Source: Macrostomum lignano
Lineage: Eukaryota
DNA: 64,000 nt
Direction: 5' to 3'
Assembly (NCBI GenBank): GCA_002269645.1
Contig: NIVC01000750.1
Location: 62,001-126,000, forward strand
Under the pieces are notes generated by a model. That model was given only the letters and a program-made list of their open reading frames with translations, ran no database searches and had not been told where the DNA came from. Below are positions 9,276-60,981 of the stretch, in pieces (position 1 is the stretch's first letter; each line of letters starts with the position of its first letter). The position numbers were made by a program, and so were the translations under genes.

Positions 9276-11716
9276 TCAAACCGAGCTCATATTGGACTTC
9301 AGGCGATCCGAGCCAGTTATCCGTCTCTTTAATCGACGAATATTCCGCCTAAAAAGGATGAGATCCCGGGATAGGGTGGACAGATCCAGGATGACAATGA
9401 ACACGCCGAATATGACGCAGACAATGATAGCGATGGCGCCCACGGATTCTGCGCCTTTGGCTTCAACACTTGGCGGAACATAGTGCTTGCCCTTGGCCAC
9501 CACTGTCTCGGATGTTTCTGCAAGTGTTTTTAAATGATGTTGCATAATTAGTTGCAGGAGTGCTGCGGGCACCTTGGTGCAACGCCTTAGGCGATGTGGC
9601 TCAACATCAAGAGCTGATGCTGAGCACATACGAGCGTACAGGTGCGCCAATACTGTACAGTACGCAGACACGCACTCAAACACATGCTCACACAGGGGTT
9701 GTAGCCTACTCGCGACTCACGACTGAAAGGTCTGGGGTTCGATTCCCGATTCCGAGGGAACAATTTGTGTCCTTATTGATCAAGATAAGGTTTATGACTC
9801 GCACGATAAATGAGCCTTAATTTTCGTACACCAGCTCCTTATTGATATGAAAATCGAAAATGTAAAATTGAAATTTCAGATTTCGCAAAGACTTCATTTG
9901 CAATTCTATAAAGTCCAGAGGTGTGATTTTGTTAATTCTAGTCTAAAACTGAAAACTTTCCGTCTCGAAAAAGCTTCTCATACCTACACGCAGGTACCAC
10001 AAGGGTTTGTTGGTAAAACTTGGAACTAGAAAAACTTACTAGTGCAAGTAGGCAGTCGCGTTACATTCCAGCTTCCTGTGTCCGAACAGAACGCGATGGG
10101 CTGGCCAATCCCAGTGCTGGATCCCGGCTGGCAACTAAATTTAATCACCGTTCCGTAGCTGTACAACTCTATCGAGTTAAACGCATCGGTAGTCACTATG
10201 CTGGTGCTGCCGTTTGCAAACTCAACGGTTGTGGAGTTGGTGTAGCCCAGGGTCGCCAGGAACAGATCTCCCGCTGTGCTCTTCTCGATCAGCTGATCGG
10301 AGAGGCAGCTGACGGCTTCATGGTGTGTGTTGAGAACAGAATGATCCAATATGGTTTTTGCTTTACAAGAGTCAGAGGGCTGTGTGCAATCTGACTTACT
10401 TCAAGCGACATTGTCGAGAGTCATACGCACAGGCACACACTGACACAGGAGTTTATCGTTAGGCATGTACACTTTACTGTGCCTTGGGGATTACGTCAGG
10501 TAAAGTCAGGCAGAATCAAAGTCAGGCAGTATCAGCACTTGTCCAAAAGCTCCGGAACAACAAATTTATCATCGTATCAAAAACTTCAGGAAGTTCACTT
10601 CTTCCTAAAGTTCAAGAAGTCCGCTTTCAACTTCTCTGTCAAGGTTCCGGTATGTTTTTTTCCTCAGCTATGCCCTGTCTCTGAGCTATGCCCTGTCTCT
10701 GAGCTATGCCCTGTCTCTGAGCTATGCCCTGTCTCTGAGCTATGCCCTGTCTCTGAGCTATGCCCTGTCTCTGAGCTATGCCCTGTCTCTGAGCTATGCC
10801 CTGTCTCTGAGCTATGCCCTGTCTCTGAGCTATGCCCTGTCTCTGAGCTATGCCCTGTCTCTGAGCTATGCCCTGTCTCTGAGCTATGCCCTGTCTCTGA
10901 GCTATGCCCTGTCTCTGAGCTATGCCCTGTCTCTGAGCTATGCCCTGTCTCTGAGCTATGCCGGCCTGTCTCTGAGCTATGTCCTGTCTCTGAGCTATGC
11001 CCTGTCTCTGAGCTATGCCCTGTCTCTAAGCTATGCCCTGTCTCTGAGCTATGCCCTGTCTCTGAGAGCTGGCATACAAAACAGACAGTGAGACACTCAC
11101 GAACACAGGTGGTGGTCTGCAGGCGACTCAGCGAAGTGCCCAGCGCTCCGGTCCAAGCGCCCTCAGTCAAAGAGGCATTGCTGAGCTCGCACGAGACCAC
11201 CTTAGTGAAGGTGCGGTCCTGGAAAAAGTCTCCTGTTTTAGCGCACTTGATATAAACCCGGTTGGGAAAGAACGGATAGCTGGACTTTTGGAACTCGTTA
11301 AATTCTTTTTCTTGAATCCGATCGATTGCTTTGTAAGCGGTGGTGTAGCTCGGTATGATGCTCTGTATTGGTGGGCAGGCCACGGCTGAAAGTGTATCGA
11401 ATTCCATTTTTTTAGTGCATTGTTTTCAAGCAAATAAAAGCTCTCGCTCGGGAAACTCACGCAGGCATGCGTTCAGGTCTGGCGGGTGCCACTCGTATCT
11501 GGTCTGATCGATGCTGTTGAATCTGCAAACTAGCTGACTCGTCACTGACAGCTTGTTGCTGTAGCTCACGTAGCCTGGGGTACAGTTGACTGGGAATGAA
11601 TCGTCATATAAGTAATAGTCCTTTGTCAGCGTGTGCAGGTAAGGCTCGACGTTCGGTATGATGACCGTAGACTTTAAGTAGGCAGTTGGACAAGCAGTGA
11701 CTGGAAAATAATAATT

Positions 11717-13298: not shown

Positions 13299-13369
<71 letters not shown>

Positions 13370-13449
13370 TAAGTAGATATGTTAACCTCACCTTGAGAGC
13401 AGGTTGCCGCAGCACTCAGACACCAGGTCAGCCACAGGAAGGAGTTCAT
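9276..13449 (-). CDS. Selectin-like receptor: SP, C-type lectin, 4 divergent sushi/CCP domains, TM, basic tail. Exons 13449-13392, 13274-13014, 12847-12629, 12124-11837, 11700-11461, 11385-11101, 10315-10040, 9517-9276.
   Basis: CTL motifs GKCWAL..AVAKC..GFL..EIWTS..W..NCAVY..VNC..AAVC. CCP-like C..C..W..C exons. TM SVGAIAIIVCVIFGVFIVILD. All seven introns are GT-AG and phase 1 and join into one frame. Confidence 0.8.
9701..9784 (+). mobile_element. Truncated SINE head (copy 3)
   Basis: GTAGCCTACTCGCGACTCACGACTGAAAGGTCTGGGGTTCGATTCC matches the head of copies 1 and 2. Confidence 0.55.
10662..11066. repeat. 18-bp minisatellite (CTGAGCTATGCCCTGTCT), about 22 copies
   Basis: Near-perfect tandem array in the intron after the third CCP exon. 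Confidence 0.95.
11717..11772. repeat. (TAG)n microsatellite, intronic
   Basis: Direct observation; source of the poly-Tyr ORF. Confidence 0.95.
12317..12631. repeat. 28-bp minisatellite (GGGTTAGTTACCATTCTTGACGCACACT), about 11 copies, each containing the upstream exon's splice donor
   Basis: Minus-strand unit contains AATG|GTAACTAAC, identical to the real donor at 12629/12628. Confidence 0.9.
13283..13372. repeat. (GATA)n microsatellite filling intron 1 of the lectin gene
   Basis: Direct observation. Confidence 0.95.
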
Positions 13450-18356: not shown

Positions 18357-25058
<6,702 letters not shown>

Positions 25059-26776
25059 ATGTTAGTGCGGCATGCGTCGGTGTCGATTCACAAACAATAG
25101 CAAATAACAAATAGTTTGGACCAACAAGTATTTAATCTGATCCATAGCAGATGTGAAACCTGCTGAAATCATTGGTTATAGCTGTTAAGTGCTATTTATT
25201 TGATCAAATTTCACTGTGCCAATAGAAGGTGACGTCAAAAATGCAATCTGTTCAACTATGAGTATAGCAAATGCCCTTGGCGTTCGTTCGATGGTCTAAA
25301 ATATGGTCCATGATTCTGGGGCTGATCTTGCTCCTCCGCAGCATTATCACTGCTTTTGACAGTCTTGTCTAAATGAAAATCTAAGGGTGAAACTACAGAG
25401 CCGCTATGGACCAAATTGATGCTTGTTGGACCAAATTAAATGCTAATTAAATTAAATTTAAAAGCTCCATTGTTTTGGCAAGCATACGGCTCGTACCTTG
25501 GATTAAATTCAATTCGTGTAGGCTCTAATGGGCTGCAAAAAGCTATACTTGCATTGAATCAACAAATTTCGTAGTTTGTTAAGACATTGTTCCGTTGTTC
25601 CGTTGTTAGTCAATGTTACCGCTTTATGGCTCTTTAACACCGTCAGAAATCTCACGAACGATTTAAACTTGCAACGGTGCGAAATTGGAGGCTCGTATGT
25701 CAATAACATGCATTGACAACCAAAGTAGAAGGACACTACATACGATTTTTTCTTAGAAATGAGCAGTTCTAGGGTAAGGAACATAGTGCTTGTCGTTAGT
25801 GCATCTAGTAAGTCGAGAGTAACATCGTACTACTGCAGCTGAATTAATATATATTCACTTTCTTTGCTGGATCAATTTTTTCAATAATTTTTTGACCTTG
25901 CAAAGACACCATTTTTACGGGAACTAACATACACCTGTACACTAACGATATAGCTCTAAAAATTGATAATTCCCATTTTAGTCTTGAGATGTTACTCAAG
26001 ACTGGAACAGTTGGACCTGCTCATATTTTCGGTATTGGGTTAAATGTATAAAATTTGATGCTGCGTTTAACTTTGTTTGTTTTTCGTCTAATCCTGAGTT
26101 GTATCGATATATTGCAGGTATTTTTCCTTTGTAGATTTTGGGAAATTGTTAAAAAAACTTTTAAGACACTACTTATAGGCCGGATTTGTCAGTAGAATGC
26201 GTCAATTTTTGTCATAGCTAGTCATTTTAAAAGTGACAAATATTAACAAATTGACTGTACGATGTATAAGTAAGAGTATATTGAATGTTTTTCATTTATT
26301 CTGATGATATTCAAACTCAAACTGCTTTTTCTTTACAGTCATTTCTGCCGAAGACTGTGATGTTTAACTATGCAGAATAGACATTTGCTGTTCGGATATA
26401 AATGTTAATAAAATAGCTGAACTGCCTGTGTGCATCTGTGCAACTTTTCTTCATAAAAACAGTGTGTACGAGCATGGCTAATTAATTTACCTCGTAGTTA
26501 ATTAGTTTTGTTAATCTTCTTATGCGCTCGTAACTAAATATAATTTTTGATTTCTATTAGCTAAAAACTGTGCTAGGTTCTACTTCGGTGGATGATGCAG
26601 TGTAGTACAGAATTCAATAATCATCGAGTACTTCTGACAGACTTTTAACGATGCTATCGCAATTTATATCGGTTTGCTAAGGCTAATTATACAACACAAA
26701 TATCTAATAGAGTTGTTATATTGTTGTTATAAAGTTGTTAAAGTTGTTATATTGCAAGAGCTTTTACTCAAAATTG

Positions 26777-29700
26777 TTAATAGATGATGCAATCCAACGG
26801 TCGCTTCCGTCCCAGCTTAGTCCAGACGAGCTCGATCAACAGGATGAGCAGGCCGATGGTGTACAGGCAGCCCGTGATCAGCAGGCAGCCGCTTACGCCT
26901 TCCAAACTGATGGCGTCGGCCTCCGTGGATCTGCCGTCTCCTTTGCCGCAGTCGGTGAAGTTCTCTCTGGACCAGTAGAAATCGAAGAGTCTCTGCATCA
27001 GTCCAGACTCGTGCATCTTCTGCAAGCTGATGGGCGAGCGTTGATTGTGGACAAAATAAGCGTGGTAATCAAACGATCGATGAGTTCATGACCATTTTCA
27101 CTTTATTTTTAGCCTAGCGTAGCCCAGCGGTCTAGCGTAGCCTAGTGGTTTAGCGTAGCCTAGTGGTCTAGCTTAGCCTAGTGGTTTAGGGTAGCCTAGT
27201 GGTCAAGCGTAGCCTAGTGGTCTAGCGTAGCCTAGTGGTCTAGCGTAGCCTAGTGGTCTAGCGTAGCCTAGTGGTCTAGCGTAGCCTAGTGGTCTAGCGT
27301 AGCCTAGTGGTCTAGCGTAGCCTAGTGGTCTAGCGTAGCCTAGTGGTCTAGCGTAGCCTAGTGGTCTAGCGTAGCCTAGTGGTCTAGCGTAGCCTAGTGG
27401 TTTAGCGTAGCCTAGTGGTCTAGCGTAGCCTAGTGGTCTAGCGTAGCCCAGCGGACTCGCGTAGCCCAGTGGTCTAGTGTAGCCTACATGTAGTGGTCTA
27501 GCGTAGCCATTTGTTACAATTAATAAGTAGCAAACTTATAGTAAACTAATAGTTAGTTTGTCAACTCCAATGGCAATCTTTTGAGCAACCGAAGCAAATA
27601 ACTGGGTAGCATAGGTCGTTAGCTAAAATTTTACTTGTAGTCGAACATTGGAGCATAGAAAGCGTCTTCCGAGTACATAAGCGCCACCGTAGATGGATTG
27701 AAAGTCTCCGAGAGCATGTAGTACAAGGAGCAGTGCCTGATTGCTTGGCCCAACAGAAAGGTGTAGTCATTTATGCAGGCTGCGTCATTTTTCGGTGGCT
27801 GAGAAAAGTTTTGTTTTAGAACTTCCTTTAGTGACTAGGAACGTTTAATTTGCTTAGTGTCAACAACCCGAAACACGACAATTCAAGACTCACATTATAC
27901 GGACAGTATTCTCCAGCTGGCATGACCACCATTGCGTCAGCGATTTGCTTGTAGATGCCTGACTCGGCAGTAGTGAGCAAGGTGTAATGGTTCGTGCCGG
28001 TTGGAACGTAGGGCTTAACAGCGGTTTGAGAGACCAGGTCTGTCAGGCTTTTGATCGGATAGTCCGTGACAGTCACAGTCTGGTGAGCAGTCAAGTCACC
28101 TGTAATGATAATTAGGAATGGTAGTAGGTATTACCCTAGAAATTAATTTTACATTAGCTCATAAAAGCACTAGCAGACGCACCGGTAAAAGCTCCAAATA
28201 TGATCAAGGTAAACATCCACCAAAATGCCATAACAGTCCTTGGCGACATCGCAAACGGGTAGAAGTCCTGGCCCTGCTGCAGGAAGCTCCCGATAGCGCT
28301 CCAAATGTACTCCTGCAGCCAGATCTCATCAGAAACTGCGTACTCAAGGCCCAAGTTGTAAGCCGAGAATGGAGAGTAGTAAGCAAGGACCCACATGACA
28401 ACTGAGGCGCACGCCAAAGTGCCTAGCAGGAGGTACCACACAGACGGACTCAACGGAGTAAAAATGTTCCACATCTTTGTGTCTGGTGGCGGTTTCGGCA
28501 CCATGACTGCGGTGGATTGGTCGAACAGCGGCGTTGAGAAGTCGATAGCGGAATCGCGAATTGAAGTCTTGGTGAAGGGGCCAGCTCCCAGGTGTGAGAT
28601 CTGGACGCGGGGAAATCAGATATAAGCAAGTATAAATAACTGATATCATTCTTCACCGAAAAAATCTTGAGAAAACATGACAGCCCACGTACTCCACGCT
28701 GAAGCTCTCCGACACATCCTGAGAAGTAGGGTTTGCCTGCCTGGGGCGCACCCCAGTTACCGTCGTCAGGTGCCTTAGTGATGTATCTGCATTTTCAGGT
28801 AAAACTCCATCCAGCTTATAATTTAATAATGCAGGTAATTAAGGACGACTATAAAAAGGTTACCTAAAATCCATTTTCTGAGCCAAAATGTCCAGCACAT
28901 CTCGAGTCATTCCTCGAATAATCACAGTTTTGTTTGGGAACTCAGCAACAAAGTCTGTCATCGGAGAGGTCTGAAAAGTTAGAAGAAAACTCATTCATTT
29001 GATCTGAATGTTGAGATAATTTTGAGAGAAAGCTGCAGTTGAGAGAAATGCATATCCAAAAGACATGTAGAACAACAAAAGAGATTTGTCAAAGTAACTA
29101 ACTCTAGGGGTACACATAACCAAGGTCTGGTTCTTGAACCCTATGAAGGTGTTCGGGAATGCCAAGCTGACTCCCTTGTAGCGGAACTGCTTGCTCAGAG
29201 CTCCGCTCGATGCATCGAACTGAGCCGACCTCAACATCGAGACCGGAGACGACCACAGCTCATTGTAGGACGCGACCACTTCGACTCGTTGCGAGCTGAA
29301 GTGTCTGGTCGAGCTGTTGAACGAGATCAGGCCTCGCTGAGTGTCATAGTCGCTGATCTGCACATCGAGTAGGAATTGGAAAGAGACCAGCTCGAAACTA
29401 GTAATGCTTGTCAATGCTAGCTCGTAGCTAGTGAGCTCACTCACACTCATGAGTCTGTTGAGCACAGTCGAGCCCGATGTCCAGTGGCGCAGTGGCGCAC
29501 ACGAGGCGTTGCCGGGAGAGAATCCCGGATCCAGCAGCGAGTCGTTGAGCGCCTTGGCCATGGCTTCTACGGCGTCTACGAAGCGAGCGTCCAGAGTCTG
29601 TCGAATGCGAATGCGACGATCGAGTGCAAGATCGAGTGCGACAGTGGCATGAATTGCACACGTGCGGTGCTGCATGATGAATCCCTGCAGCCATCAAGCA

Positions 29701-30961
29701 GCAGACATGAAACGCTCACCCGAAGCCAGTCCGTCTGGCACTGAGGAAACACATCTATCACTGCTGCTGTGCACTCGGTGAACACGCTGCCTCTCAGCAG
29801 AGCGACGTTCGCGTTCGCCGGCGTCACGCTGAGCACATCGGCCTTGGACAGTCCGGTGTCGAGCACGAGCCAGAAGTAGTTCTGCTGCATCACTGCAGCT
29901 TCACTGGCGAGCCTGAGCACACTGAGAGCATTGCGAGGAGAGGCAAACAGCAGCAGCTTGAACACTTTCTTCTTGACCAGCCGCTTGAGGTGGTGCACCA
30001 GGTCAGGAGTAACAGAAGCGTTGACAGTGTCGTCCACTCGGAATGTGAGACTGCTCACACCGGCAGAGGAGAGGCTGGACTGCAGGTTCTGCAGCATCAG
30101 TGAATCTGAATCAATTTTATGGTTCGTATTTTGTTAATATTTATAGCTAGAAAAAGTGCTACCGTATGAAACATAACCCGAATACCGGAAAAAGTACATA
30201 AAATAAAGATTTTGCAAAACATTCAAACCTTGTTTTTTATCGTAAAGCATGGCGACTTTGTTGAGTTCCGATTCGTCCTTGAATATGCTTGCCGCTGCGC
30301 GCATAATGTCGTGAGAGCTGTGACTGGCTACCACAGTGTATCCTGCTATTTTTTAGGCAAGTTAAGACTGGCCAGCTTATTAATACTGAATAAAATTGTG
30401 AAAAGAACTTTAAAAGACAAGCTGCAGCATACCTTTGCTCAGCCGAGCAGAGTCGCACAGTCCAGTCGGCAGGGCGATCAGCGGCAGCTGCAGAGACTTG
30501 CTCAGTGAGCTCACTTCATCCAGCAGAGAGCAGCTGCCGACGCCAATCAGACCTGACAGGCCGCTCTCCGAGCACACTGCGGAGCGAGACACACAGACAC
30601 ATGCACAGTTTCACAGCTCGCACTCACACTTGCATTCGTGCAATTTATGCTTCAATTGTGTGCATTGATTGAGCAGGTTGAGCAGAGCAGCGATTGAGTC
30701 GCGTAGCAAATGCTTCAACTCACCAGTCCTGACAGCCTGGTGTGAGCTGCACGAGCTCACATTGACATGCACATACGAGAGTGTGTGGCCCTGCAGCACT
30801 CTCCAGTTGTAGTTGACCCGTCTGGCGAAGGCGACGTCGATGAGCGAGCCGTTCAAGTTTCCGGCCTCCGTGATCACGCCGACTGTCAGGTCCAGAGCGG
30901 ATGAGCTGCCCAGATAAACTGAGAAGGCAGTGACTATTGCTAACACGCGTGCAACTGCCAT
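26777..30961 (-). CDS. Divergent ionotropic glutamate receptor-like gene A (ATD-S1-M1-P-M3-S2-M4). Exons include 30961-30724, 30576-30433, 30342-30229, 30105-29720, 29597-29445, 29357-29103, 28970-28864, 28786-28693, 28600-28183, ~28101-27894, ~27799-27632, 27026-26777.
   Basis: DDGNWG..FSGCVGELQRG; GPFTKTSIRDSAIDFSTP; WSAIGSFLQQG; FWW; S2 GTN..CINDY..C; GLMQRLFDFYW..C..ISLEGVSG; M4. Splice phases join into one ORF. Confidence 0.9.
27110..27510 (+). repeat. 18-bp minisatellite (TAGCGTAGCCTAGTGGTC), about 20 copies; each unit contains a Pol III A-box
   Basis: TAGCCTAGTGG fits TRGCNNAGTGG and matches the SINE 5' end. One unit carries GGACTCGCG, also found in the SINE head. Confidence 0.85.
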
Positions 30962-33204
30962 TACTTTGGAGTTAGTTGATTAGTAGCTCGTAGAGTTGAT
31001 TGTATTTGGATTCACATGCAAGGTCTTTTTATATAGGGATATCAGCAGCCAATCAAGTCTAAGTCAGCTACCGTTGGAAATACCTCTCAGGCAGTTTCCA
31101 TCGCTTACTTTATTTTTATATAGCTTGCAAAGATTTTTAAGTTCACTTATCATGCCGATTGGTGTTTTCAGTGATGTAAAAGAGTCTTCCTTAACTTCTT
31201 TTGCAGTTGAATATCAGAAATAACTTTGCCTGTGCACAAATATGTGTGCTTCTGCATGCTGAGGGTTCAGCAGAACCAGTTTGAATGCTTGTATCCTCGG
31301 CGGCTGCGGGATCCCCTGTCACCTGTGATTTGCAACAGTGCTCCAAGCCTTCCTACAGACTAACCAACTTGCACAGAGATCTGGATAAGTAGGCTGCTAA
31401 AAATAATTCATCGCAAAAAACGTGAAAGAGCGTCAAAGTTATTTAGTACTTGTTGACAAAATTTCTCCGCGCATATCTCCTTTTGTAAAGTTAATGAATC
31501 TTAGTATTAGGTAAGAATTGAAACTTTCAAGCACTTGATAGATCGACAGATTTTGCTATTAAATGTGCCACTGATTGACTGGAAGAAATCATTGGGTCAT
31601 TGTAGAAGCAGTTTGCGTCAAATTTTAGCCTAAGCTATTTAAGTGCTGGTGCACTAAATTCGCCAAATTTATCAGTGCAGCACTGAAGCCTGCAACTCTG
31701 GAGAAGAATCATAACGTGTTGTCAACGCCCAATAGAGAACTTTGTTTGAATTTAATTGCATAGATTTATCTGGCGTTGCTCAACTGCATGTAAATTTCCG
31801 CAAGGTTAGGCTAAACATAGCTCTACAGCCACGCCCAAGCAGGCAGTTAAAGCATCGAAGGCATTCGGCTGTCTATAGGAAATTTAATCGCTGATTTAAA
31901 CAGATACTGCTGATGACATCAGCTCAACCTCCTGCTGCTAATGAAGCTGACTGTTTTTTTACTTCATTAGTTTTCCCTGTTCGTACTGCCTGACCTGACT
32001 TTGATAATAGGGCCTGTCCCGTGTGGTGTCCCTTAGACGCTATGTCTCTTGTGCTGATGATATACCCTAAAAGAACGTTTTTTCGGAGCTTGTTTTGTGC
32101 ATTCGAGTGCAACAGCAGAATAGGTTCTGCTCTGATTTCTACACATTAATTGCTAGATTTTATTTTATATAATCCATAATGCAAATGCTATAGGATTACA
32201 GACCAGCTGCCAAAGTCTTCCGATCGAACTATAAATTGACTCGATTCCGAAATGCAGTCTAAATTGTGTGCCTTCGAGTTTAGAGAACGGTCTCAAAGCT
32301 CGGGGGCCACTTTTGAGATAGAAAATGTTTGGTTAAGCAAGTTGGTAGCTTTAACGTCATCTTATATTGAGTTCTCAGTCATTGTTTAGTTATACTTTTT
32401 GGAGTGCCACCATACACTTTCTAATTATGGTTCTCTAGAAGTTCTTTTGAGGTAATCTTTACCGTCAGTGACTTATAATTCAATGATTATTGATAATTTT
32501 TTCAACCAGACAGTAGGATTCTACATGGACTAAGAGAAAAACATGGCACAAAACCGTGAAGCTGGTCAGAGAAGATGTATCCCTGACACTGACTTAGTGG
32601 GTGGATGAGGCTTTACATATCCTTCTATCTTAAAACTAGAATTTCGGGACAGTAAACGCTTGACCGATATTTGGCCTTCCGATGATGGTAAAATGCGCAG
32701 CATCTTGCACGTTATTTGGGGGGGGGGGGTAGTAGAAAGTGAAGTTAACTTCTGTTCGACTATAGTTGGTACTTTTATAGTGCTTCCCGTGATGAATTTC
32801 AGCAAGAAATCTCTGACAAAGTTTCAAATTAAAAAATCTTACTGCTGAGGATCAAGTATTTTACCTACTGACTCGAGAAGATTGAGACACAATGGAAGTT
32901 CTAGCAATATTCTTCGAAGATATGATAAAATCCAGAATGCAACTTCCCTTAGATTTCAACTTCTCAATCATTATGTAGAAAAATTATTTCTGTCTCGTGG
33001 TGCACTTAATAGTCAAAATAATTCAAATGATATTATGAAATATGCAATCAACACCCTCGAAGTGCAAATTTAATAAACATAATATAAGCTGCTTCCAGTA
33101 AACTGAAAATGTTGATGTTAAAGCACGTTCTAACTACGCAGTGCAAAGTTATTATCTAATGTTGGATTTGTCGTCCAAACGTAGCCTAATATTTGAAATT
33201 TTAA

Positions 33205-36200
33205 TCAATAGAAGAAGCAATCCAGCGGCTGCCTCTTAGCCAGCTTAGTCCAGACAAGCTCTACCAATAGAATCAGCAGTCCCAGGCCGTAGAAGCAGAG
33301 AGTCGCTATGAAGCACCCACCAGCGCTCTCCAGGCTTATAGCGTCGGTTTCGGCAGAGCTGCCAACAGAGCAGACTGAGTCGCTGGACCAGTAGAGCTGG
33401 AACCAGCGCTGCAGTTGGCCAGTTTCGTGCAGTTTCTGCATGCTGCAAATAGAGTTAAACAGAATTCGGAACATGTTCTTCATTTGGTACTACTGAACAG
33501 TAGGATCACCTAAGCAGAGTCCTAGGTTCACCTAGCGAATGTCAATGTTTTCCTCGTTACATCTGAGTGGATTTTTTGTCCTAAAATATTTGTGCCTTTC
33601 TCTGCGCGTAACCATTTTCTAATAGGAATCGAAACAGCAAGGAGTAAAAAGTGAGTTTATGCTCCCGACTCTCTACTTTTTAAGGAAGATTGAAACTCAC
33701 TGGAAGTTGAACAGTTCCGCATAAAACGCGTCATCTGGTAGCATCAAAGCAATTGGCGCAGTTAAAAACAATTCTTCGGCCAGGTAAAATTGAGTACAAT
33801 TCTTTCTGGCTATGTTTAGCAGGTAAGTGTAGTCCGTGAGGCAGGCCTGGTTAGGATTTGGCGGCTAAAAATGGGATCGAAAATTACCAGATTAGTATGA
33901 CAAACTGCTTCGTAGGTTATTTACGATGGCTGAGTAATTGACGACAGTAAGCTGGAATTCAAGTCAATTTGAGCTCATGAAAGTGAGATCTCGTTAATAT
34001 TGTGCTCGGATTTACTTTACCGTGCCCCCTGTTCCTGCTACACCGATACAAGCGTCAAACAATGCAATACAATGATCGAGTCGCTCACATCTGTCGGACA
34101 GTCATCGTACGGCCCCAATTCAACCATACTCTCGGTGATTTTCTTGTAGACGCCAGATTCCGCGTTCAAAAGCAGAGTGTGCAGACTTGTACCAGCAATT
34201 ACGTAGGGTCTGATTTCTGTTTGTCCTGTCAAATCGTCCAGGGTCTTGATGGGATAGTGCGTCACAGTCACCGTCAGGTGGGCCGTCAGGTCGCCTGAAA
34301 TGACGCGAAGAAGATTCACTGCGGTTCATTTTTCGTTTTCTTTTAGTACGTTTTGTTCTGATTGAAAATAGAATTGAAGTTTTGGTAGACGATCATTTTT
34401 TATTTTGCACTTTCGTCTAGTAGAGAATTTTCAATGAGTCTGCTCTCCAAGGGAAACATTTTTTCTTTTTCCTTTTAAAGCTGTCGCAGATCAAATGGAC
34501 GCTGGTGTCACTTCAAATTTCCGTATCAGTCGTACTTGGTACATCGTTGTTGTAGGGGCGCCCACCAAGAGACAGGGGCGCCTACCAAAACACCAAATAT
34601 TGGCCCCTTTGTGTTACGCTCCCCCTACAATTAAAACTCTGCACACGCCATCGCTTTGAGCATAAAAGTGCCTATTGGTGAGTTTGTGGTTCAAACTAGC
34701 TCTGTAAAGCTATAGCTAACGATTTGTGTTTGACTACTGCAAAGTCGTTTTGTAATAACTGATCAAGCCGTCTCACCATTGAATGCGCCACAAATAATCA
34801 CGGAAAGCAGCCACCAGAACGCCATGGCTGTTCTAGACGACATTGCAAACGGATAGAAGTCTTGGCCCTGTTGCAGAAAGCTGCCTATCGCACTCCACAG
34901 GTACTCTTGAAGCCAGACTTCATCAGCTATGGCAAACTCAAGATTCAAGTTGTAGGCTGTAAACGGTGAAAAATAGGCCAGGACCCAAGTGGCAAAGGTG
35001 GTGACAAACAGAGCTGCAACTATAAAAAGCCAGACGCTCATAGTGAAAGGTGAGAAAACTCTCCATAGTTTAGACTCTGGAGCCGGCCTCGGCAATAAAA
35101 TAGCGTTCGATTCTTCAAACAGAGGAACGGAGAAGTCAATGACCTCGTCACGCGCTGCGGTGATGGTAAACGGACCGGCAGCGACTGAAACTTCCTGTAA
35201 ATCGTTCCAATTGAAGTGCGCTGTGCATTATCTTTTATTTAGTCTATGGCGGAAGGCTTTAGACAACTGCAATCAAGGCGACAATGTCCGTCAGGCGGCC
35301 ATGCAGTCAAGCCCATTTGCTGACACCTGAGCACACACGTGCACACAGATACGACATACTCTGCTCCTCAGGGTATTACCCCCATGTGCTGGGCAAGAAT
35401 CGCCCCAAGCACCAGGCCAGTTTTCTTTTGGACGAGCCTCAAATTAATGTGGCCGAGCAAGGAATCAAACCTGGGCACTCTGTCACGAGAGTCAGGGGCG
35501 TTGCATACTCTTGGTAATTGGGGGGAAAGTACTATTGAATTCGTAAACAGTGGCAAAACTACTGTTAATAGCGATATGCGCTCAAGACGACACACAAATC
35601 TTGTAAGCGTTCTACGTTGTATATGAGATCTGGCCTCTGTGAATAAATTACGAAGCTGCTGCAGACGTTAGTAGCAATAAAAAATCATGTGAAATTTATC
35701 GATTAAGGTCATAAAAGCCTTCGGTCACCTACTCACCCCTCTCTGCAACTCGCCAACGCATCCGTTAAAGTAGGTTGAGTTGACTTCAGGGGAGCCCCAG
35801 TTTCCGTCTGTCGAATCTTTCGTTAAAAATCTTCAACGTTTCGTCATAATAAAATTAGTACATGTACTTATAAAAACGAGAAAAAGTACGAATGTAAGAA
35901 TTATATCACCATACCGAAAGTCTAACTGCGTTGAGAAGTATTCAAGGATGCTCAAAGTCATTCCGCTGATTATTACTGTCTTGTTAGGAAACTTCTCGAC
36001 AAATACAGTCATTGGAGCGCTCTGTATGTTATTGTAGGTTATTGGTGAAACGTAAGTACGATTTTACGAGTACGTTCCTAAAAATTTATTCACAAAGTAA
36101 AGGCACAAACCTCGGGAGAGCAGACAATGATGGTCTGGTTCTTGAAACCCATGAAGGTGTTCGGGAATGCCAAACTGACTCCCTTGTAGCGGAACAGCTT

Positions 36201-37971
36201 GCTCAAAGCTCCGCTCGATGCATCGAACTGAGCCGACCTCAGCATCGAGACCGGAGACGACCACAGCTCATTGTAGGACGCGACCACTTCGACTCGTTGC
36301 GAGCTGAAGTGTCTGGTCGAGCTGTTGAACGAGATCAGGCCTCGCTGAGTGTCATAGTCGCTGATCTGCACATCGAGTAGGGATTGGGGAGAGACCAGCT
36401 CGAAACTAGTAATGCTTGTCAATGCTAGCTCGTAGCTAGTGAGCTCACTCACACTCATGAGTCTGTTGAGCACAGTCGAGCCCGATGTCCAGTGGCGCAG
36501 TGGCGCACACGAGGCGTTGCCGGGAAGGAATCCCGGATCCAGCAGCGAGTCATTGAGCGCCTTGGCCATGGCTTCTACGGCGTCTACGAAGCGAGCGTCC
36601 AGAGTCTGTCGAGTGCGAGATCGAGTGCGAGATCGAGTGCGACAGTGGCATGCGTTGCACACGTGCGGAGCTGCATTATGAATCCCTGCAGCCATCAAGC
36701 AGCACACATGAAACGCTCACCCGAAGCCAGTCCGTCTGGCACTGAGGAAACACATCCATCACTGCTGCTGTGCACTCGGTGAACACGCTGCCTCTCAGCA
36801 GAGCGACGTTCGCGTTCGCCGGCGTCACGCTGAGCACATCGGCCTTGGACAGTCCGGTGTCGAGCACGAGCCAGAAGTAGTTCTGCTGCATCACTGCAGC
36901 TTCTCTGGCGAGCCTGAGCACACTGAGAGCATTGCGAGGAGAGGCGAGCAGCAGCAGCTTGAACACTTTCTTCTTGACCAGCCGCTTGAGGTGGTGCACC
37001 AGGTCAGGAGTAACAGAAGCGTTGACAGTGTCGTCCACTCGGAATGTGAGACTGCTCACACCGGCAGAGGAGAGACTGGACTGCAGGTTCTGCAGCACTG
37101 TTGTGCCTGCAGTGACCAAATGCAGACTTGAATCATCGTGGGAGTACAATCACGTGCACAAGTGTGTATTTAGATAAAAATGATGTCTGATTATACAACG
37201 AAAATGCGAACGTCGTATTTTACTTTATTCACAGCACTCACTTTGCAGACCATCGTAGAAAACTGCCACACTGCTAATTATGGAATCCGAGGTAACAATG
37301 GAGGCAGCTGCAGCGACGATGTTTTCTGAGCTGTGGCTGCCCACGATTGTCATGTCTGCAATTCCGCGTGATTTTTACTTCAAAACCAGACATCTAGAGA
37401 AATGGTAAAAAGACACCAGACATCCATCTCTGTTACCTTTGCTCAGCCGAGCAGAGTCGCACAGTCCAGTCGGCAGGGCGATCAGCGGCAGCTGCAGAGA
37501 CTTGCTCAGTGAGCTCACTTCATCCAGCAGAGAGCAGCTGCCGACGCCAATCAGACATGACAGGCCGCTCTCCGAGCACACTGCGGAGCGAGACACACAG
37601 ACACATGCACAGTTTCACAGCTCGCACTCACACTTGCATTCGTGCAATTCATGCTTCAATTGTGTGCATTGATTGAGCAGGTTGAACAGAGCAGCGATTG
37701 AGTCGCGTAGCAAATGCTTCAACTCACCAGTCCTGACAGCCTGGTGTGAGCTGCACGAGCTCACATTGACATGCACATATGAGAGTGTGTGGCCCTGCAG
37801 CACTCTCCAGTTGTAGTTGACCCGTCTGGCGAAGGCGACGTCGATGAGCGAGCTGTTCACGCTTCCGGCCTCCGTGATCACACCGACTGTCAGGTCCAGG
37901 GCGGATGAGCAGCCGACTATTACTAACCAGTAAACAAAGGCTACTTCTTTTACTGTCTTTGATGTTGTCAT
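33205..37971 (-). CDS. Divergent ionotropic glutamate receptor-like gene B, tandem paralog of A with the same exon structure
   Basis: SP MTTSKTVKEVAFVYWLVIVGCSSA; TDGNWG..FNGCVGELQRG; GPFTITAARDEVIDFSVP; WSAIGSFLQQG; GAFNGDLTAHLT; GTS..CLTDY; GQLQRWFQLYW; M4. Every exon of A has a counterpart. Confidence 0.9.
35330..35510 (-). mobile_element. Possible second, decayed tRNA-derived SINE family (related segment at ~19310-19465)
   Basis: Minus strand GACTCTCGTGACAGAGTGCCCAGGTTTGATTCC is B-box-like. The CCTGAGCACACA end motif is shared, in opposite orientation, with 19445-19462. Confidence 0.3.
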
Positions 37972-38869
37972 CCTGACAAATAGTTTCAATGCAATAAGCT
38001 CAATGAGGTCTGCATCATTTGTAAGAAATGGCGGTGCGCGGATTCAAATCAGCCAAAGAAAGTTTGGTTTTTATAAATACATGCTCGTTCTAAGTCTGCA
38101 TAAGCTTAAGTTAAATGGCACTCATGGGCTGCGGTAATTCCTTTTGTGTTTCTGCTCAATAATGCCACCTATAAATAAGTCGTTCCTTCAGGCGCTCAGT
38201 AACAGTTGCCTAGAGCTTGAATCAGATGAAAGACGACTGGTTTACCGTTTTATAGTTTCTCGTAGGGAGAGCTGGTAATTATCGCTCGATAAGCCCAACC
38301 AGGCGATATCTGTGGAATCTATGGAACTTGTATGATTTGAAACAATATTTTTGCTTGAGGCCTTGCTTGCAGCTTGTCAGATTTCTTAGAATTCATCATA
38401 GGTCTGTGAATAAATGTTGACATTCATATTCCATTTTCTCCGGAACACGGGTCGGTATCGCTCTTGGCAATGTGAATATAAATTGAGTTCTCTGTTAACT
38501 AAGGCTCTACATTACTTCAGCACTTGGTCAATAAAATCGAGAACCAATGGCAACTTAGCCACTAGAGGCGGCACATTGAGTGCTCTTCAACCAGATTGAT
38601 GAAATGTTTCCTGCCTTCCTAGTTCGCCAGATCATAAAAAGCTTTACATATACCTTGCATGTTTTCTTATAAACCATTGTTGATACTCGTAGCGAGTGAC
38701 ACAAGGGTGCCGCCAAGGACTACAAGTAGAAGGACGCAAGGCTCAGAATTGGAGAAAATTTGATTGGAGGCCGATTTTTTAATGTATCTCCACGCTACGA
38801 GCGTATTGATCGTAAGATGCTTATTTTGTCGCAGAATATGCAGTACCATATGCTGTTTCATTTAAGACA

Positions 38870-41373: not shown

Positions 41374-41767
41374 CGAAGAGCTTGCGTGCACGGCAGCCGT
41401 TCACGTAAGCTCAGAATTGCGTGCACGGCGGCTATCTACCTAGTGCTTTATTTGCATGTATGCAGCCGTACACCTAGTGTTGTAATTGCGTGCACGGCAG
41501 CCGGCAATTGGCCGGGACTGGGGCCCTTAAATCCACGCATTGGCATTGGCAAACCTAATTAAAAAATATTTTTACTATATTGTTTTATAATGTTTTATCC
41601 CCCGTACACCATGGACTGCAAATGTAATCTTAATTCATTGTTTTTTTGTTAACTTGAATATTAATTCGAATAGTATATGACTTACTGTATAAGCCTATAA
41701 GATATAGCTCTGCCGTGCACGCAATTCTGAGCTTACGTGAACGGCGGCCGTGCACGCAAGCTCTTTG
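41374..41767. mobile_element. 394-bp MITE with ~58-bp TIRs and 9-bp TSD (Mutator-type)
   Basis: TIR C(G/A)AAGAGCTTGCGTGCACGG..CCGTTCACGTAAGCTCAGAATTGCGTGCACGGC; AATTAAGAA at 41365-41373 and 41768-41776. Confidence 0.85.
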
Positions 41768-49685: not shown

Positions 49686-50317
49686 CGAAATTTACAATGT
49701 TCTAACTAAACTACTTACTACGTGCTTGTAAGTAGAAATTTAAGTTTTTTATCCTTTAATCTGAGAAAATAGCAACAAAATGTCTTTTTCTACTTATTCA
49801 GTAGCTGCGATAGGAAATATGATCAAATCATAATTTTTTTTCCTCATTATTGAAAAATTTTATATGCTACTTGCACTACTTACCGCTTTTAAGTGAGTAA
49901 AATTGTACATACTTTGTTCTCAGCTTGTTCTTAAACTAGTTAATTCCGATATCTATTTGCATTTAAATAATGATTTTAGAGTTTTTTGTCATATATTCTG
50001 TACTATTACTTTGGTATTAATTTCATGTTGGGCATGTAAAGTTACGCTCAGCAATTAACCACTTCTCTCTGCATTCAACTTTTTAAATAATGCGCTCGAC
50101 ACCGCAAGTTACACCGACTATAATATATCAAGTGCTGCTTTTTTACTACTTACAGTAGCGTATTCGACTCCTGTTGGTTTCTTAATTGAAATTTCGAAAT
50201 ATTCTTAGTCATAGGTGCTCTGTCTGCTTATTGGTATGATCTGCTCCTGGAAAATGTCAAGCAGTTTGGCTCTTGCTTTCAGTTCAATACGACTTTGGGA
50301 CTAGGCTAGGCTAACCA

Positions 50318-51880
50318 ATCAGTGAAATCCCAATCAGTGAAATCCCAATCAGTGAAATCCCAATCAGTAGAATCCCAATCAGTGAAATCCCAATCGGTGA
50401 AATCCCAATCAGTGGAATCCCACTCAGTGGAATCCCAATCAGTGCAATTTTCTCAGTGGAATCCCAATCAGTGCAATTTTCTCAGTGGAATCCCAATCAG
50501 TGAAATCCCAATCAGTGAAATCCAAATCAGTGAAATCCAAATCAGTCAAATCCCAATCGGTGGAGTCCTAATCGGTGGAGTCCCAATCGGTGGAATCCCA
50601 ATCAGTGGAATCCCAATCAGTAAATCAGTGAAATCCCAGTCAGTGGAGTCCCAATCGGTGGATTCCCAATCGGTGGATTCCCAATCAGTGGAATCCCAAT
50701 CAGTAAATCAGTGAAATCCTAGTCAGTGGAGTCCCAATCAGTGGAATCCCAATCAGTGGAATCCTCTCAGTGAAATCCAAATCAGTGGAGTCCCAATCGG
50801 TGAAATCCCAGTCAGTGGAGTCCCAATCAGTAAATCAGTGAAATCCCAGTCAGTGGAGTCCCAATCGGTGGATTCCCAATCGGTGGATTCCCAATCAGTG
50901 GAATCCCAATCAGTGGAATCCCAATCAGTGGAATCCTCTCAGTGAAATCCAAATCAGTGGAGTCCCAATCGGTGAAATCCCAGTCAGTGGAGTCCCAATC
51001 GGTGGATTCCCAATCAGTAAATCAGTGAAATCCCAGTCAGTGGAGTCCCAATCGGTGGATTCCCAATCGGTGGATTCCCAATCAGTGAAATCCCAGTCAG
51101 TGGAGTCCCAATCGGTGGATTCCCAATCGGTGGATTCCCAATCAGTGAAATCCCAATCAGTGGAATCCCAATCAGTGGAATCCCAATCAGTGGAATCCTC
51201 TCAGTGAAATCCAAATCAGTGGAGTCCCAATCGGTGAAATCCCAGTCAGTGGAGTCCCAATCGGTGGATTCCCAATCGGTGGATTCCCAATCAGTGAAAT
51301 CCCAGTCAGTGGAGTCCCAATCGGTGGATTCCCAATCGGTGGATTCCCAATCAGTGGAATCCCAATCAGTGGAATCCTCTCAGTGAAATCCAAATCAGTG
51401 GAGTCCCAATCGGTGAAATCCCAGTCAGTGGAGTCCCAATCGGTGGATTCCCAATCAGTAAATCAGTGAAATCCCAGTCAGTGGAGTCCCAATCGGTGGA
51501 TTCCCAATCGGTGGATTCCCAATCAGTGAAATCCCAGTCAGTGGAGTCCCAATCGGTGGATTCCCAATCGGTGGATTCCCAATCAGTGAAATCCCAATCA
51601 GTGGAATCCCAATCAGTGGAATCCCAATCAGTGGAATCCTCTCAGTGAAATCCAAATCAGTGGAGTCCCAATCGGTGAAATCCCAGTCAGTGGAGTCCCA
51701 ATCGGTGGATTCCCAATCAGTAAATCAGTGAAATCCCAGTCAGTGGAGTCCCAATCGGTGGAGTCCCAATGGGTGGAGTCCCAATCAGTGGAATCCCAAT
51801 CAGTCAAATCCCAATCAGTCAAATCCCAATCAGTGGAATCCCAATCAGTGGAATCCTCTCAGTGAAATCCCAATCAGTTG
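50318..51880. repeat. 15-bp minisatellite (GTG(G/A)AATCCCAATCA), about 100 copies, with higher-order blocks
   Basis: Direct observation; identical ORFs at 51025 and 51466 imply a 441-bp secondary duplication. Confidence 0.95.
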
Positions 51881-51955
51881 AATCCAACTCAATGAAAGTT
51901 TTTATAAAGAGAATTTTTTAGAGACTGACTAATTCCAATTTCCAGAACAAAGGTC

Positions 51956-59800: not shown

Positions 59801-60098
59801 AGACAGACACTAAGACAGGCAGACACTAAGACAGGCAGACACTAAGACAGGCAGACACTAAGACAAGACAGACACTAAGACAGGCAGACACTAAGACAAG
59901 ACAGACACTAAGACAGGCAGACACTAAGACAGGCAGACACTAAGACAGGCAGACACTAAGACAAGACAGACAGACAGACAGACAGACACTAAGATTGGCA
60001 GACACTAAGACAAGACAGACACTAAGACAGGCAGACACTAAGACAGACAGACAAAGACAGACAGACAGACAGACAGACAGGCACTAAGACAGACAGAC

Positions 60099-60157
<59 letters not shown>

Positions 60158-60260
60158 CTAAAACAGACAGACAGACAGACAGACAGACAGACCGACAAAA
60201 AGACAGACAGACAGACCGACAAAAAGACAGACAGACAGACAGACAGACACTAATACAGAC

Positions 60261-60327
<67 letters not shown>

Positions 60328-60741: not shown

Positions 60742-60810
<69 letters not shown>

Positions 60811-60838
60811 CTACGACAGACAGACAGACAGAGACTAC

Positions 60839-60886
<48 letters not shown>

Positions 60887-60981
60887 CTACGACAGACAGA
60901 CAGACAGACAGACAGAGACTACGACAGACGGACAGACAGACACTAAAACAGACAGACAGACAGACAGACAGACCGACAAAA

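What the first reader, a model, noticed from the sequence alone, without database searches (positions are those of the whole stretch)
29135..37910. Tandem iGluR paralogs are a mosaic of near-identical and deeply diverged blocks
Seen: 30431-30910 vs 37435-37914 differ at about 10 of 480 nt by hand count, intron included. 29135-30096 vs 36130-37096 are similarly near-identical, introns included. The exon between them is diverged (YTVVASHSSHDIMRAAASIFKDESELNKVAMLYD vs MTIVGSHSSENIVAAAASIVTSDSIISSVAVFYD), as are the signal peptides and all LBD/channel exons, whose introns are unalignable. One tract ends at the exon-2 donor. Inference: recent patchy gene conversion homogenising most of the ATD (assembly domain) while sparing one ATD exon and the ligand/channel module. 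This would keep the two subunits co-assembling while their ligand specificity diverges.
Basis: partly seen in the sequence, partly recalled or inferred. Interest (0 to 1): 0.7.

Follow-up and report, generated by a model that had tools for sequence, protein, structure and literature searches.

The report
Gene conversion between tandem glutamate-receptor genes
Two neighbouring glutamate-receptor-like genes of the flatworm Macrostomum lignano, and at least five more family members, share almost identical DNA (introns included) for their outer amino-terminal domain while the rest of each gene diverged long ago, which is a clean but conventional case of regional gene conversion.

Summary
Two intact 12-exon iGluR-like genes lie head-to-tail on the minus strand: A at 30961-26777 and B at 37971-33205. 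They share two sharply bounded tracts. The first is A 30910-30430 / B 37914-37434, with 10 differences in 481 nt. The second is A 30096-29124 / B 37097-36132, with 24 substitutions and one 7-nt indel.

Inside the tracts, synonymous (3.6%) and intron (3.4%) divergence are equally low. Everywhere else synonymous sites are saturated (pS 0.63-0.93) and introns align no better than shuffled sequence. That excludes protein-level selection and points to DNA exchange.

The tracts together cover the amino-terminal domain (ATD), from the end of the leader peptide to the first strand of the ligand-binding domain. The exception is a 333-nt island: intron 2, exon 3, intron 3 and 9 nt of exon 4.

GC3 and intron GC are raised in the tracts, and the outer edges are graded. 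At least seven M. lignano loci carry the same blocks. This indicates recurrent, family-wide regional gene conversion.

Its functional gloss (keeping two subunits co-assembling) is untested and too narrow. This is a new member of a known kind, of moderate interest.

The parts
26777..30961 (-). Gene A: iGluR-like subunit of 842 aa in 12 exons. E1 30961-30724, E2 30576-30433, E3 30342-30229, E4 30105-29720, E5 29597-29445, E6 29357-29103, E7 28970-28864, E8 28786-28693, E9 28600-28183, E10 28099-27894, E11 27798-27635, E12 27026-26777 including the stop.
   Evidence: Homology-guided splice model with an intact ORF and all introns GT-AG. Pfam ANF_receptor, Lig_chan-Glu_bd and Lig_chan all above curated cut-offs. 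Best PDB relative is GluK2, E = 2.6e-37.
33205..37971 (-). Gene B: iGluR-like subunit of 840 aa with the same 12-exon structure and phases. E1 37971-37728, E2 37580-37437, E3 37355-37242, E4 37106-36721, E5 36605-36453, E6 36365-36111, E7 36021-35915, E8 35830-35737, E9 35194-34777, E10 34294-34089, E11 33864-33701, E12 33442-33205.
   Evidence: The N-terminal 372 aa match UniRef A0A1I8J285 (P0009, M. lignano) except at 4 residues.
30430..30910 (-). Converted tract 1, copy A: exon 1 from codon 18, intron 1, exon 2 and the first 3 nt of intron 2.
   Evidence: 97.9% identical to 37434-37914. Six of the 10 differences lie in the outermost 100 nt.
37434..37914 (-). Converted tract 1, copy B.
30097..30429 (-). 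Unconverted island, copy A: intron 2, exon 3, intron 3 and the first 9 nt of exon 4. GC is 0.36.
   Evidence: Identity to B is at the random level in the introns. Exon 3 is 52% identical at the nt level and 47% at the aa level, with pS 0.81 and dN 0.56, the highest of all exons.
37098..37433 (-). Unconverted island, copy B. GC is 0.43.
29124..30096 (-). Converted tract 2, copy A: exon 4 from its 10th nt, intron 4, exon 5, intron 5, and exon 6 up to 21 nt before its donor.
   Evidence: 24 substitutions plus a 7-nt indel (A 29611-29617) against 36132-37097. It ends at ...FKNQT, immediately before the first LBD strand as aligned to GluK2 and GluD1.
36132..37097 (-). Converted tract 2, copy B.
26777..29123 (-). 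Gene A region that is anciently diverged from B: ATD-LBD junction, ligand-binding domain, pore and transmembrane segments (end of exon 6 to exon 12).
   Evidence: pS 0.63-0.93 and aa identity 42-61%. Introns are unalignable.
33205..36131 (-). Gene B region that is anciently diverged from A: ATD-LBD junction, ligand-binding domain, pore and transmembrane segments.

Best explanation
A and B are old tandem paralogs of a lineage-specific iGluR-like family in Macrostomum lignano. Non-allelic homologous recombination, in the form of interlocus gene conversion, repeatedly copies DNA between family members. It does so only within two blocks that together encode the amino-terminal domain, so those blocks evolve in concert across at least seven loci, introns included.

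The leader peptide, a 333-nt island around exon 3 (strand beta4, helix alphaD, strand beta5 and the first turn of alphaE of the lower ATD lobe) and the whole ligand-binding/channel module have escaped. They are now too diverged to pair, so they act as fixed walls for conversion tracts.

Shown here: the mosaic, its boundaries, equal similarity at silent, intronic and replacement sites, the GC rise, and the family-wide sharing at protein level.

Inferred: that conversion is recurrent rather than a single event, that lack of homology now limits the tracts, and any role of selection in setting the partition.
For: (1) Divergence is bimodal. Within the tracts pS is 0.036, intron divergence 0.034 and pN 0.015. 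Outside them pS is 0.63-0.93 and introns are at shuffled level. Fisher p is about 1e-68.
(2) Introns 1, 4 and 5 are as similar as the exons around them, which protein-level selection cannot produce.
(3) The differences look like real mutations: 24 transitions, 10 transversions and one indel in a short repeat. Both ORFs and all splice sites are intact.
(4) There is a GC-biased-conversion signature. GC3 is 0.75 in the tracts against 0.56-0.63 elsewhere (p = 1e-4 and 3e-8). Converted introns are 0.50-0.52 GC against 0.405 (p = 1e-3 and 2e-4). The tracts are 0.57 GC against 0.36-0.43 for the island.
(5) The outer edges are graded: 11 differences in 201 nt against 1 in 201 nt at the island-facing edges, p = 0.006. 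This is expected if many tracts have variable outer end points.
(6) The pattern is family-wide. Thirteen UniRef M. lignano proteins, falling into at least six further leader-peptide types, carry the same blocks at 0-3 differences per 125 aa. They differ by 5-27 of 42 residues in exon 3 and by 35-48% in LBD/TMD exons.
(7) Two variants segregate across different loci: S/L in NS[S/L]TRHF and Q/L in LSK[Q/L]FRY.
(8) The outgroup paralog P0004 differs by 29-58% in the same ATD segments, so the ATD is not intrinsically invariant.
(9) P0009 independently carries the B leader, block 1, B exon 3 and block 2 in one model.
Against: No DNA of the other family members or of sister species could be obtained, so family-wide concerted evolution rests on protein models. 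Those models come from an older, fragmented assembly. Several are truncated at the same point, P0003 fuses two neighbouring genes, and P0002 appears to have lost the exon-3 reading frame.

The A-B pair alone could be explained by one or two events rather than a recurrent process. The similar divergence of both tracts (2.1% and 2.5%) fits a single episode.

The island-facing edges are sharp, which a pure many-short-tracts model does not predict unless tracts often run across the island in other gene pairs.

No reads were available to validate the assembly.
Confidence: 0.85

Rival explanations
1. One-off history for this pair. A single conversion or unequal exchange of about 1.8 kb copied the whole ATD region from one gene to the other. 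A second event then re-installed a foreign or original exon-3 cassette using the flanking identical blocks as homology. On this view there is no long-term concerted evolution.
For: The two tracts have nearly the same divergence (10/481 and 24/966). The island-facing edges are perfectly sharp, with 0-1 differences per 100 nt. Exon-3 types are shared between loci with different leader peptides: P0003n equals P0010, and P0005 is close to P0006. This suggests the island can move as a cassette.
Against: Raised GC3 and intron GC in the tracts, graded outer edges and at least seven loci sharing the blocks all point to a repeated process. A single event cannot homogenise seven loci.
Confidence: 0.15
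2. Adaptive partition. Selection favours a common ATD so that all family members can co-assemble, or share a partner or trafficking route. Selection also removes conversion events that reach exon 3 or the ligand-binding domain, which carry subunit-specific functions.
For: The outer tract limits lie inside exons 1 and 6. They coincide with the end of the leader peptide and with the first LBD strand, so the unit is the structural domain rather than the exons. The homogenised exons 1-2 align to the segment holding helices B and C, which I recall (not tested here) form the upper-lobe dimer interface. The island covers the start of helix alphaE. In AMPA receptors, alphaE, alphaF and beta7 form the lower-lobe dimer interface, which is the variable, subunit-selective one (PMC3496038). 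pN/pS in the tracts is 0.41, so the ATD is under some constraint. Exon 3 has the highest dN of all exons, 0.56.
Against: Nothing here tests assembly, expression or ligand binding. The mapping onto alphaD/alphaE rests on alignments at about 20% identity. The structure prediction failed, with pLDDT 29.7. A neutral model gives the same mosaic: regions that diverged first lose the homology needed for conversion. dS is saturated outside the tracts, so no omega test for diversifying selection is possible.
Confidence: 0.25
3. Assembly or polishing artefact in a neopolyploid genome: collapsed or chimeric haplotypes or homeologs threaded into two tandem genes.
For: M. lignano has three homeologous subgenomes with about 2.2% SNP divergence, and its assemblies are known to contain collapsed or chimeric stretches (PMC10733133). 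The tract divergence of 2-3% is of the same order.
Against: Homeolog mixing would give about 98% identity along the whole gene, not 50% outside the tracts. Both copies keep intact frames, identical exon lengths and phases, and copy-specific substitutions with a natural 2.4:1 transition bias. There are no homopolymer-type indels. The same block plus variable-island architecture appears in independently deposited protein models, including a B-like one.
Confidence: 0.04
4. Strong purifying selection, or an embedded conserved non-coding element, keeps the ATD blocks identical without any DNA exchange.
For: The ATD blocks are somewhat conserved even to the outgroup P0004, with about 70% identity in exon 4.
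Against: Synonymous and intron sites are as similar as replacement sites. There is no Rfam match in the region; the only hit is a sub-threshold mir-547 match in the intergenic spacer at E = 0.72. P0004 differs by 29-58% in the same segments.
Confidence: 0.01

Closest known systems
Regional gene conversion in teleost clustered protocadherins (fugu and zebrafish Pcdh alpha/gamma variable exons; PMC1852091)
   Same: Many tandem paralogs of a neural cell-surface receptor share one near-identical region (>99% in fugu) while another region stays diverged and defines each paralog. Similarity is equal at synonymous sites, and GC3 is raised in the homogenised region. The homogenised part is the membrane-proximal or constant part and the diverged part is thought to carry specificity.
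   Different: In Pcdh the unit is part of one large exon. Here the tracts run through three introns, are interrupted by an internal unconverted exon cassette, and their outer limits match a structural domain (the ATD). The protein family (iGluR) and phylum (Platyhelminthes) differ. In the iGluRs the homogenised part is the membrane-distal domain.
Classical interlocus gene conversion and concerted evolution of tandem duplicates with escape of selected segments (reviews PMC3924837 and PMC3966226; globin, opsin and RH examples recalled from my own knowledge)
   Same: Mosaic of young and old segments in old duplicates, sharp tract boundaries, under-estimated duplicate age inside the tracts, and GC bias.
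   Different: Most textbook cases involve two to four genes. Here at least seven loci share the blocks, in a neopolyploid genome.
AKDF-type ionotropic glutamate receptors (GluK2, GluD1 and GluA2 are the best PDB matches)
   Same: ATD-LBD-pore/TM architecture, a QQG pore-loop motif, and the conserved ligand-binding Arg and Thr.
   Different: Only about 20-25% identical. The gate motif SYTANLAAF reads FTGDLTAHQ or FNGDLTAHL. The acidic residue that binds the agonist alpha-amino group (GluK2 LMESTT) is G, N or A. The C-terminal tail is very short. The ligand is unknown.
ATD (NTD)-driven subunit assembly in AMPA and kainate receptors (PMC3496038)
   Same: The converted exons 1-2 align to the upper-lobe segment containing helices B and C. 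[quoted passage not shown] The unconverted island reaches the start of alphaE, part of the variable, subunit-selective lower-lobe interface.
   Different: That system was established by crystallography and biophysics. Here the link is inferred only from low-identity alignments, and no assembly data exist for the flatworm proteins.

Membership tests
Ionotropic glutamate receptor superfamily (iGluR) | Amino-terminal LIVBP-like domain (Pfam ANF_receptor) | tested here: met
   PF01094 scores 68.4 bits for A and 50.5 bits for B against a cut-off of 25.4.
Ionotropic glutamate receptor superfamily (iGluR) | Bipartite ligand-binding domain interrupted by the channel (Lig_chan-Glu_bd plus Lig_chan), with a pore loop and transmembrane segments | tested here: met
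   PF10613 scores 47.9 and 55.2 bits. PF00060 scores 84.9 and 87.2 bits. The proteins align end to end with GluK2 5kuf (residues 32-814, E = 2.6e-37), including the pore motif LQQGQ against MQQGS.
Ionotropic glutamate receptor superfamily (iGluR) | Canonical amino-acid agonist triad: Arg and Thr in lobe D1, and an acidic residue in lobe D2 | tested here: not met
   Arg (SIRDS / AARDE) and Thr (GPFT) are present. The position of GluK2 E738 (DYAFLMEST) is G in A (DYTFLLGQA), N in B (DYTYLLNIA) and A in P0001. The HMMER posterior is low in this stretch, but the DY.FL anchor is clear.
Ionotropic glutamate receptor superfamily (iGluR) | SYTANLAAF gate motif in M3 | tested here: inconclusive
   A reads GAFTGDLTAHQTV and B reads GAFNGDLTAHLTV, against SSYTANLAAFLTV. 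About 3-4 of the 9 motif positions are kept.
Ionotropic glutamate receptor superfamily (iGluR) | Ligand-gated cation channel activity | not testable with these tools
   Needs expression and electrophysiology.
Interlocus gene conversion / concerted evolution | Bounded tracts of high identity inside otherwise diverged paralogs, beyond chance | tested here: met
   The permutation maximum run is 34 nt against 146 nt observed, and Fisher p is about 1e-68.
Interlocus gene conversion / concerted evolution | Similarity equal at synonymous, intronic and replacement sites, so not due to selection on the protein | tested here: met
   pS 0.036, introns 0.034 and pN 0.015 inside the tracts. Silent sites are saturated outside.
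Interlocus gene conversion / concerted evolution | GC or GC3 enrichment of converted DNA (biased gene conversion) | tested here: met
   GC3 is 0.75 against 0.56-0.63. Converted introns are 0.50-0.52 GC against 0.405. All four tests give p <= 1e-3.
Interlocus gene conversion / concerted evolution | Paralogs within a species are more alike in the tract than orthologs between species | not testable with these tools
Interlocus gene conversion / concerted evolution | More than two family members share the tracts, and variants are shared across loci | tested here: met
   Tested at protein level only. At least seven leader-peptide types share the blocks, and S/L and Q/L variants are distributed across loci. 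The caveat is that the models come from an older fragmented assembly.
Regional gene conversion of the protocadherin-cluster type (constant versus specificity-bearing regions) | The unconverted regions carry the paralog-specific function | not testable with these tools
   The only support is that exon 3 and the LBD/TMD are the diverged parts. No functional data exist.

The most novel reading that the evidence does not exclude
The family may be built as a constant/variable system. On this reading, selection-steered gene conversion keeps a common ATD scaffold, with an identical upper-lobe dimer interface, across a whole tandem array. A short cassette at the lower-lobe interface (exon 3) and the ligand-binding module diversify and are occasionally swapped between loci through the identical flanks. 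This would give combinatorial heteromeric chemoreceptor-like channels with a shared assembly code. It would be the first case where conversion tract limits are shown to be set by iGluR domain function.
Probability: 0.2. Interest if true: 0.65.

Novelty: new member of a known kind. Interest (0 to 1): 0.4.

Why it matters
The locus gives a very clean natural example of domain-delimited concerted evolution in an ion-channel family. The same genes hold DNA that looks a few percent old next to DNA saturated with change.

In practice, phylogenies, orthology calls and duplication dating for Macrostomum iGluRs will be wrong if the ATD is included. The repeated blocks of about 0.5 and 1 kb are also a likely cause of truncated and fused gene models in this neopolyploid genome.

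Biologically, the locus offers a testable link between the ATD's role in subunit assembly and the evolutionary forces acting on receptor arrays. The exon-3 cassette is an obvious candidate for a subunit-selectivity element.

Tried and rejected
- **DNA of other family members:** DNA-level tests across the family and in sister species were therefore impossible.
- **Structure:** The AlphaFold2 prediction of P0001 with the only admissible alignment (4 sequences) failed, with mean pLDDT 29.7 and pTM 0.19. No fold search was run, and exon 3 could be placed only through HMMER alignments to GluK2 and GluD1.
- **Non-coding RNA:** The Rfam scan of 26000-38500 found no RNA family that could explain intron conservation.
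- **Extra exon-3 copies:** A tblastn search for mutually exclusive exon-3 copies found only the two known exons.
- **Further iGluR genes:** tblastn found no other iGluR gene in the window.
- **A corrected estimate:** A first per-exon estimate suggested pN about equal to pS inside the tracts. That was an artefact of including the 9 diverged nucleotides at the start of exon 4. The tract-limited value is pN/pS = 0.41.
- **Literature:** Searches found no report of gene conversion in M. lignano or in iGluR amino-terminal domains.
- **Rejected explanations:** Purifying selection alone, homeolog collapse, and transposon capture of ATD exons. For the last, the island and tract edges are homologous and in frame in both genes, and I saw no TE hallmarks, though I ran no dedicated TE search.


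Full report
**What is there**

The window contains two head-to-tail genes on the minus strand, about 7.0 kb apart. A homology-guided splice model gives gene A as 30961-26777 (842 aa) and gene B as 37971-33205 (840 aa). The model used Macrostomum lignano proteins found as guides. Each gene has 12 exons, all introns are GT-AG, exon lengths are identical for exons 2-11, and both reading frames are intact.

Pfam finds ANF_receptor (the amino-terminal domain, ATD), Lig_chan-Glu_bd and Lig_chan above the curated cut-offs in both genes. The best solved relatives are GluK2 (E = 2.6e-37), GluD1 and GluA2.

The organism is M. lignano or something indistinguishable from it. The first 372 residues of B equal UniRef A0A1I8J285 (P0009) except at four positions. 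No third iGluR gene is in the window.

**Check of the observation**

The claim holds.
- A 30430-30910 against B 37434-37914 is 97.9% identical: 10 mismatches in 481 nt, no gaps.
- A 29124-30096 against B 36132-37097 is 96.9% identical. MAFFT shows 24 substitutions and one 7-nt indel in intron 4.
- A 50-nt sliding comparison of the whole genes shows nothing else above about 80%, and most of the rest is at random level.
- By feature, exons 2, 4 and 5 are 97-98% identical. Introns 1, 4 and 5 are 98.6%, 93.9% and 96.6% identical.
- Exon 3 is 52% identical at the nt level and 47% at the aa level. Exons 7-12 are 54-65% identical at the nt level. Introns 2, 3 and 6-11 align no better than shuffled controls.

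**Not chance, and not selection on the protein**

Restricted to the tracts, synonymous divergence is 0.036 (10 of 276 sites), intron divergence is 0.034 (12 of 349) and non-synonymous divergence is 0.015 (12 of 816). Outside the tracts pS is 0.63-0.93, which is saturated.

The contrast at synonymous sites gives Fisher p of about 1e-68. The longest perfect run is 146 nt, against a maximum of 34 nt in 2000 permutations. Because silent and intronic sites are as similar as replacement sites, DNA was copied rather than conserved. The differences that do exist show a natural spectrum of 24 transitions and 10 transversions.

**Anatomy of the mosaic**

Tract 1 starts inside exon 1 at codon 18 of A (codon 20 of B). 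By eye this is at the end of the hydrophobic leader; no signal-peptide predictor was available. It ends three bases into intron 2, at the exon-2 donor.

Tract 2 starts 9 nt inside exon 4 and ends 21 nt before the exon-6 donor, after ...FKNQT. Alignments to GluK2 and GluD1 place the next residues on the first strand of the ligand-binding domain: LVMCTPRTSPM against LIVTTILEEPY, and TLKVVTVLEEPF in GluD1.

The converted DNA is therefore the ATD as a structural unit, minus an island of 333 nt in A and 336 nt in B. The island consists of intron 2, exon 3, intron 3 and the first three codons of exon 4.

By the same alignments, the island encodes strand beta4, helix alphaD, strand beta5 (VAMLYD against TVTVVYD, with high posterior) and the first turn of helix alphaE. 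In AMPA receptors, alphaE, alphaF and beta7 form the lower-lobe ATD dimer interface, which is the variable, subunit-selective one. The upper-lobe interface is conserved (PMC3496038). The converted exons 1-2 align to the segment that holds helices B and C, which I recall from the iGluR ATD literature form that upper-lobe interface. This placement is an inference from alignments at about 20% identity. The attempt to model the protein failed, with pLDDT 29.7.

**The phenomenon is family-wide**

The protein search returned four 90%-identity clusters, holding 13 UniRef M. lignano sequences. Aligned with A and B, they define at least seven loci by leader peptide:
- A
- B / P0009
- P0003 / P0007
- P0010
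- P0001 / P0005 / P0008
- P0006
- P0002 / P0011 / P0012

All carry the same two blocks. Any two loci differ at 0-3 of 125 residues in exon 4, 0-3 of 76 in exons 5-6a and 0-2 of 53 in exon 6b. They differ at 5-27 of 42 residues in the exon-3 island, 27-33 of 74 in exons 6end-8 and 34-48% in exons 9-12.

Exon-3 sequences fall into discrete types that are shared by loci with different leaders. P0003 and P0010 are identical there, and P0005 and P0006 nearly so. A's type is unique. Two block variants (S/L in NS[S/L]TRHF and Q/L in LSK[Q/L]FRY) are distributed across loci. A more distant paralog, P0004, differs by 29-58% in the same ATD segments, so the ATD is not intrinsically frozen.

One caveat applies. 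These models come from an older assembly and include obvious artefacts. Three are truncated at the same residue inside block 2, P0003 fuses two neighbouring genes, and the P0002 group appears to have lost the exon-3 reading frame. These are exactly the errors that near-identical 0.5-1 kb repeats would cause.

**Mechanism**

The best-supported account is recurrent interlocus gene conversion within a tandem array. Three observations argue for a repeated process rather than one accident.
- **GC enrichment.** GC3 is 0.75 in the tracts against 0.56-0.63 outside. The three converted introns are 0.50-0.52 GC against 0.405 for the other eight. All four tests give p <= 1e-3. This is the same signature used to diagnose regional conversion in fugu protocadherins (PMC1852091).
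- **Graded outer edges.** The outer 100 nt of each tract carry 11 differences in 201 nt, against 1 in 201 nt at the island-facing edges (p = 0.006). The family alignment shows the same intermediate variability in the first 20 or so residues of the mature ATD.
- **Number of loci.** At least seven loci are homogenised.

Tract end points lie in exons 1, 2, 4 and 6, with introns carried along inside. This is what homology-dependent repair between old paralogs would give. Only sequence that is still similar can pair, and the unalignable island, leader and LBD now act as walls.

The sharp island-facing edges are explained if tracts in some gene pairs run right across the island, using the identical flanks, and so move exon 3 as a cassette. 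The shared exon-3 types fit that. This step is inferred.

On timing, silent divergence in the tracts is about 3.5%. That is of the order of, or slightly above, the 2.2-2.4% divergence between the three homeologous subgenomes of this neopolyploid (PMC10733133). The last A-B exchange is therefore recent only relative to the saturated remainder.

**Rivals**

- **Assembly artefact.** This is unlikely. Mixing homeologs would give about 98% identity everywhere, not 50% outside the tracts. Both copies have private, transition-biased substitutions, and a B-like model with the same mosaic exists independently. I could not examine reads.
- **Purifying selection or a hidden non-coding element.** The silent-site data and an empty Rfam scan exclude this.
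- **A one-off long conversion followed by replacement of the island.** This cannot be excluded for this pair alone, but it does not explain the family.

The claim that conversion preserves co-assembly while ligand specificity diverges remains a hypothesis.

In its favour, the tract limits match the ATD's structural limits rather than exon limits. pN/pS in the tracts is 0.41, so the ATD is under some constraint. Exon 3 has the highest dN of any exon (0.56) and reaches the start of helix alphaE.

Against it, a neutral escape-and-trap process predicts the same picture. dS saturation prevents any test for diversifying selection, and nothing is known about expression or assembly.

These proteins also lack the acidic residue that binds the agonist amino group in canonical iGluRs: G, N or A in place of GluK2 E738. 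Their M3 gate motif is strongly diverged as well. They are not ordinary glutamate receptors, and "ligand specificity" is itself unknown.

**Comparison and novelty**

This works like regional gene conversion in clustered protocadherins and like classical concerted evolution of tandem duplicates (PMC1852091, PMC3924837, PMC3966226). It meets every defining feature of that kind that I could test. The between-species test could not be run.

I found no report of gene conversion in M. lignano or in iGluR amino-terminal domains. It is therefore a new member of a known kind. The case is unusually clean. It is practically important for annotating and dating this gene family, and it is a reasonable entry point for asking whether ATD-mediated assembly shapes receptor-array evolution.

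Noticed in passing
window 1-64000 (for example 55479-59091, 59462-61817, 50315-51885, 18539-19270, 10666-11066): The window is packed with mini- and microsatellite arrays; TRF returns 31 rows. Examples are a 26-nt unit repeated 139 times (3.6 kb), an (ACAG)n array of about 588 copies (2.4 kb) and a 15-nt unit repeated 108 times. Many create long spurious ORFs.
   Followed up: partly
27114-27486 (intron 11 of gene A): An 18-nt minisatellite (CTAGCGTAGCCTAGTGGT, 20.7 copies, 93% matches) sits inside intron 11 of gene A. It accounts for most of the length difference from B's intron 11 (608 against 258 nt).
   Followed up: no
35736-35195 and 34776-34295 (introns 8 and 9 of gene B): Introns 8 and 9 are 542 and 482 nt in B but 92 and 83 nt in A. 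This suggests insertions in B or deletions in A. The content was not examined.
   Followed up: no
29444-29358 (A) and 36452-36366 (B), intron 5: Intron 5 is 87 nt, in frame and free of stop codons in both genes. Retaining it would add 29 residues (VSELTSYELALTSITSFELVS...) without breaking the frame.
   Followed up: no
62701-63324 (-) and 5303-5953 (-): Neighbouring coding exons are present. One holds a phospholipase C Y-domain plus a C2 domain (PF00387, 3.1e-26; PF00168, 6.1e-17). The other is an ORF containing a thrombospondin type-1 repeat (PF00090, 1.4e-6).
   Followed up: partly
41376-41435 and 41704-41765: An inverted repeat of about 62 nt at 95% identity, with arms about 270 nt apart, lies in an AT-rich stretch downstream of gene B's promoter side. 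It could be a small foldback or MITE-like element.
   Followed up: no
UniRef M. lignano models P0003, P0006, P0009, P0010, P0002/11/12: The public protein models of this family look damaged by the repeated blocks. Three stop at the same residue (…HFSSQRV) inside block 2. P0003 runs from one gene into the next. The P0002 group appears to have lost the exon-3 reading frame.
   Followed up: partly
23409-23969 and 23955-24357: A 273-nt unit is repeated 2.1 times at 98% identity and abuts an (ATAG)n array of about 101 copies. Related (ATAG)n stretches occur at 13307-13379 and 23357-23423.
   Followed up: no
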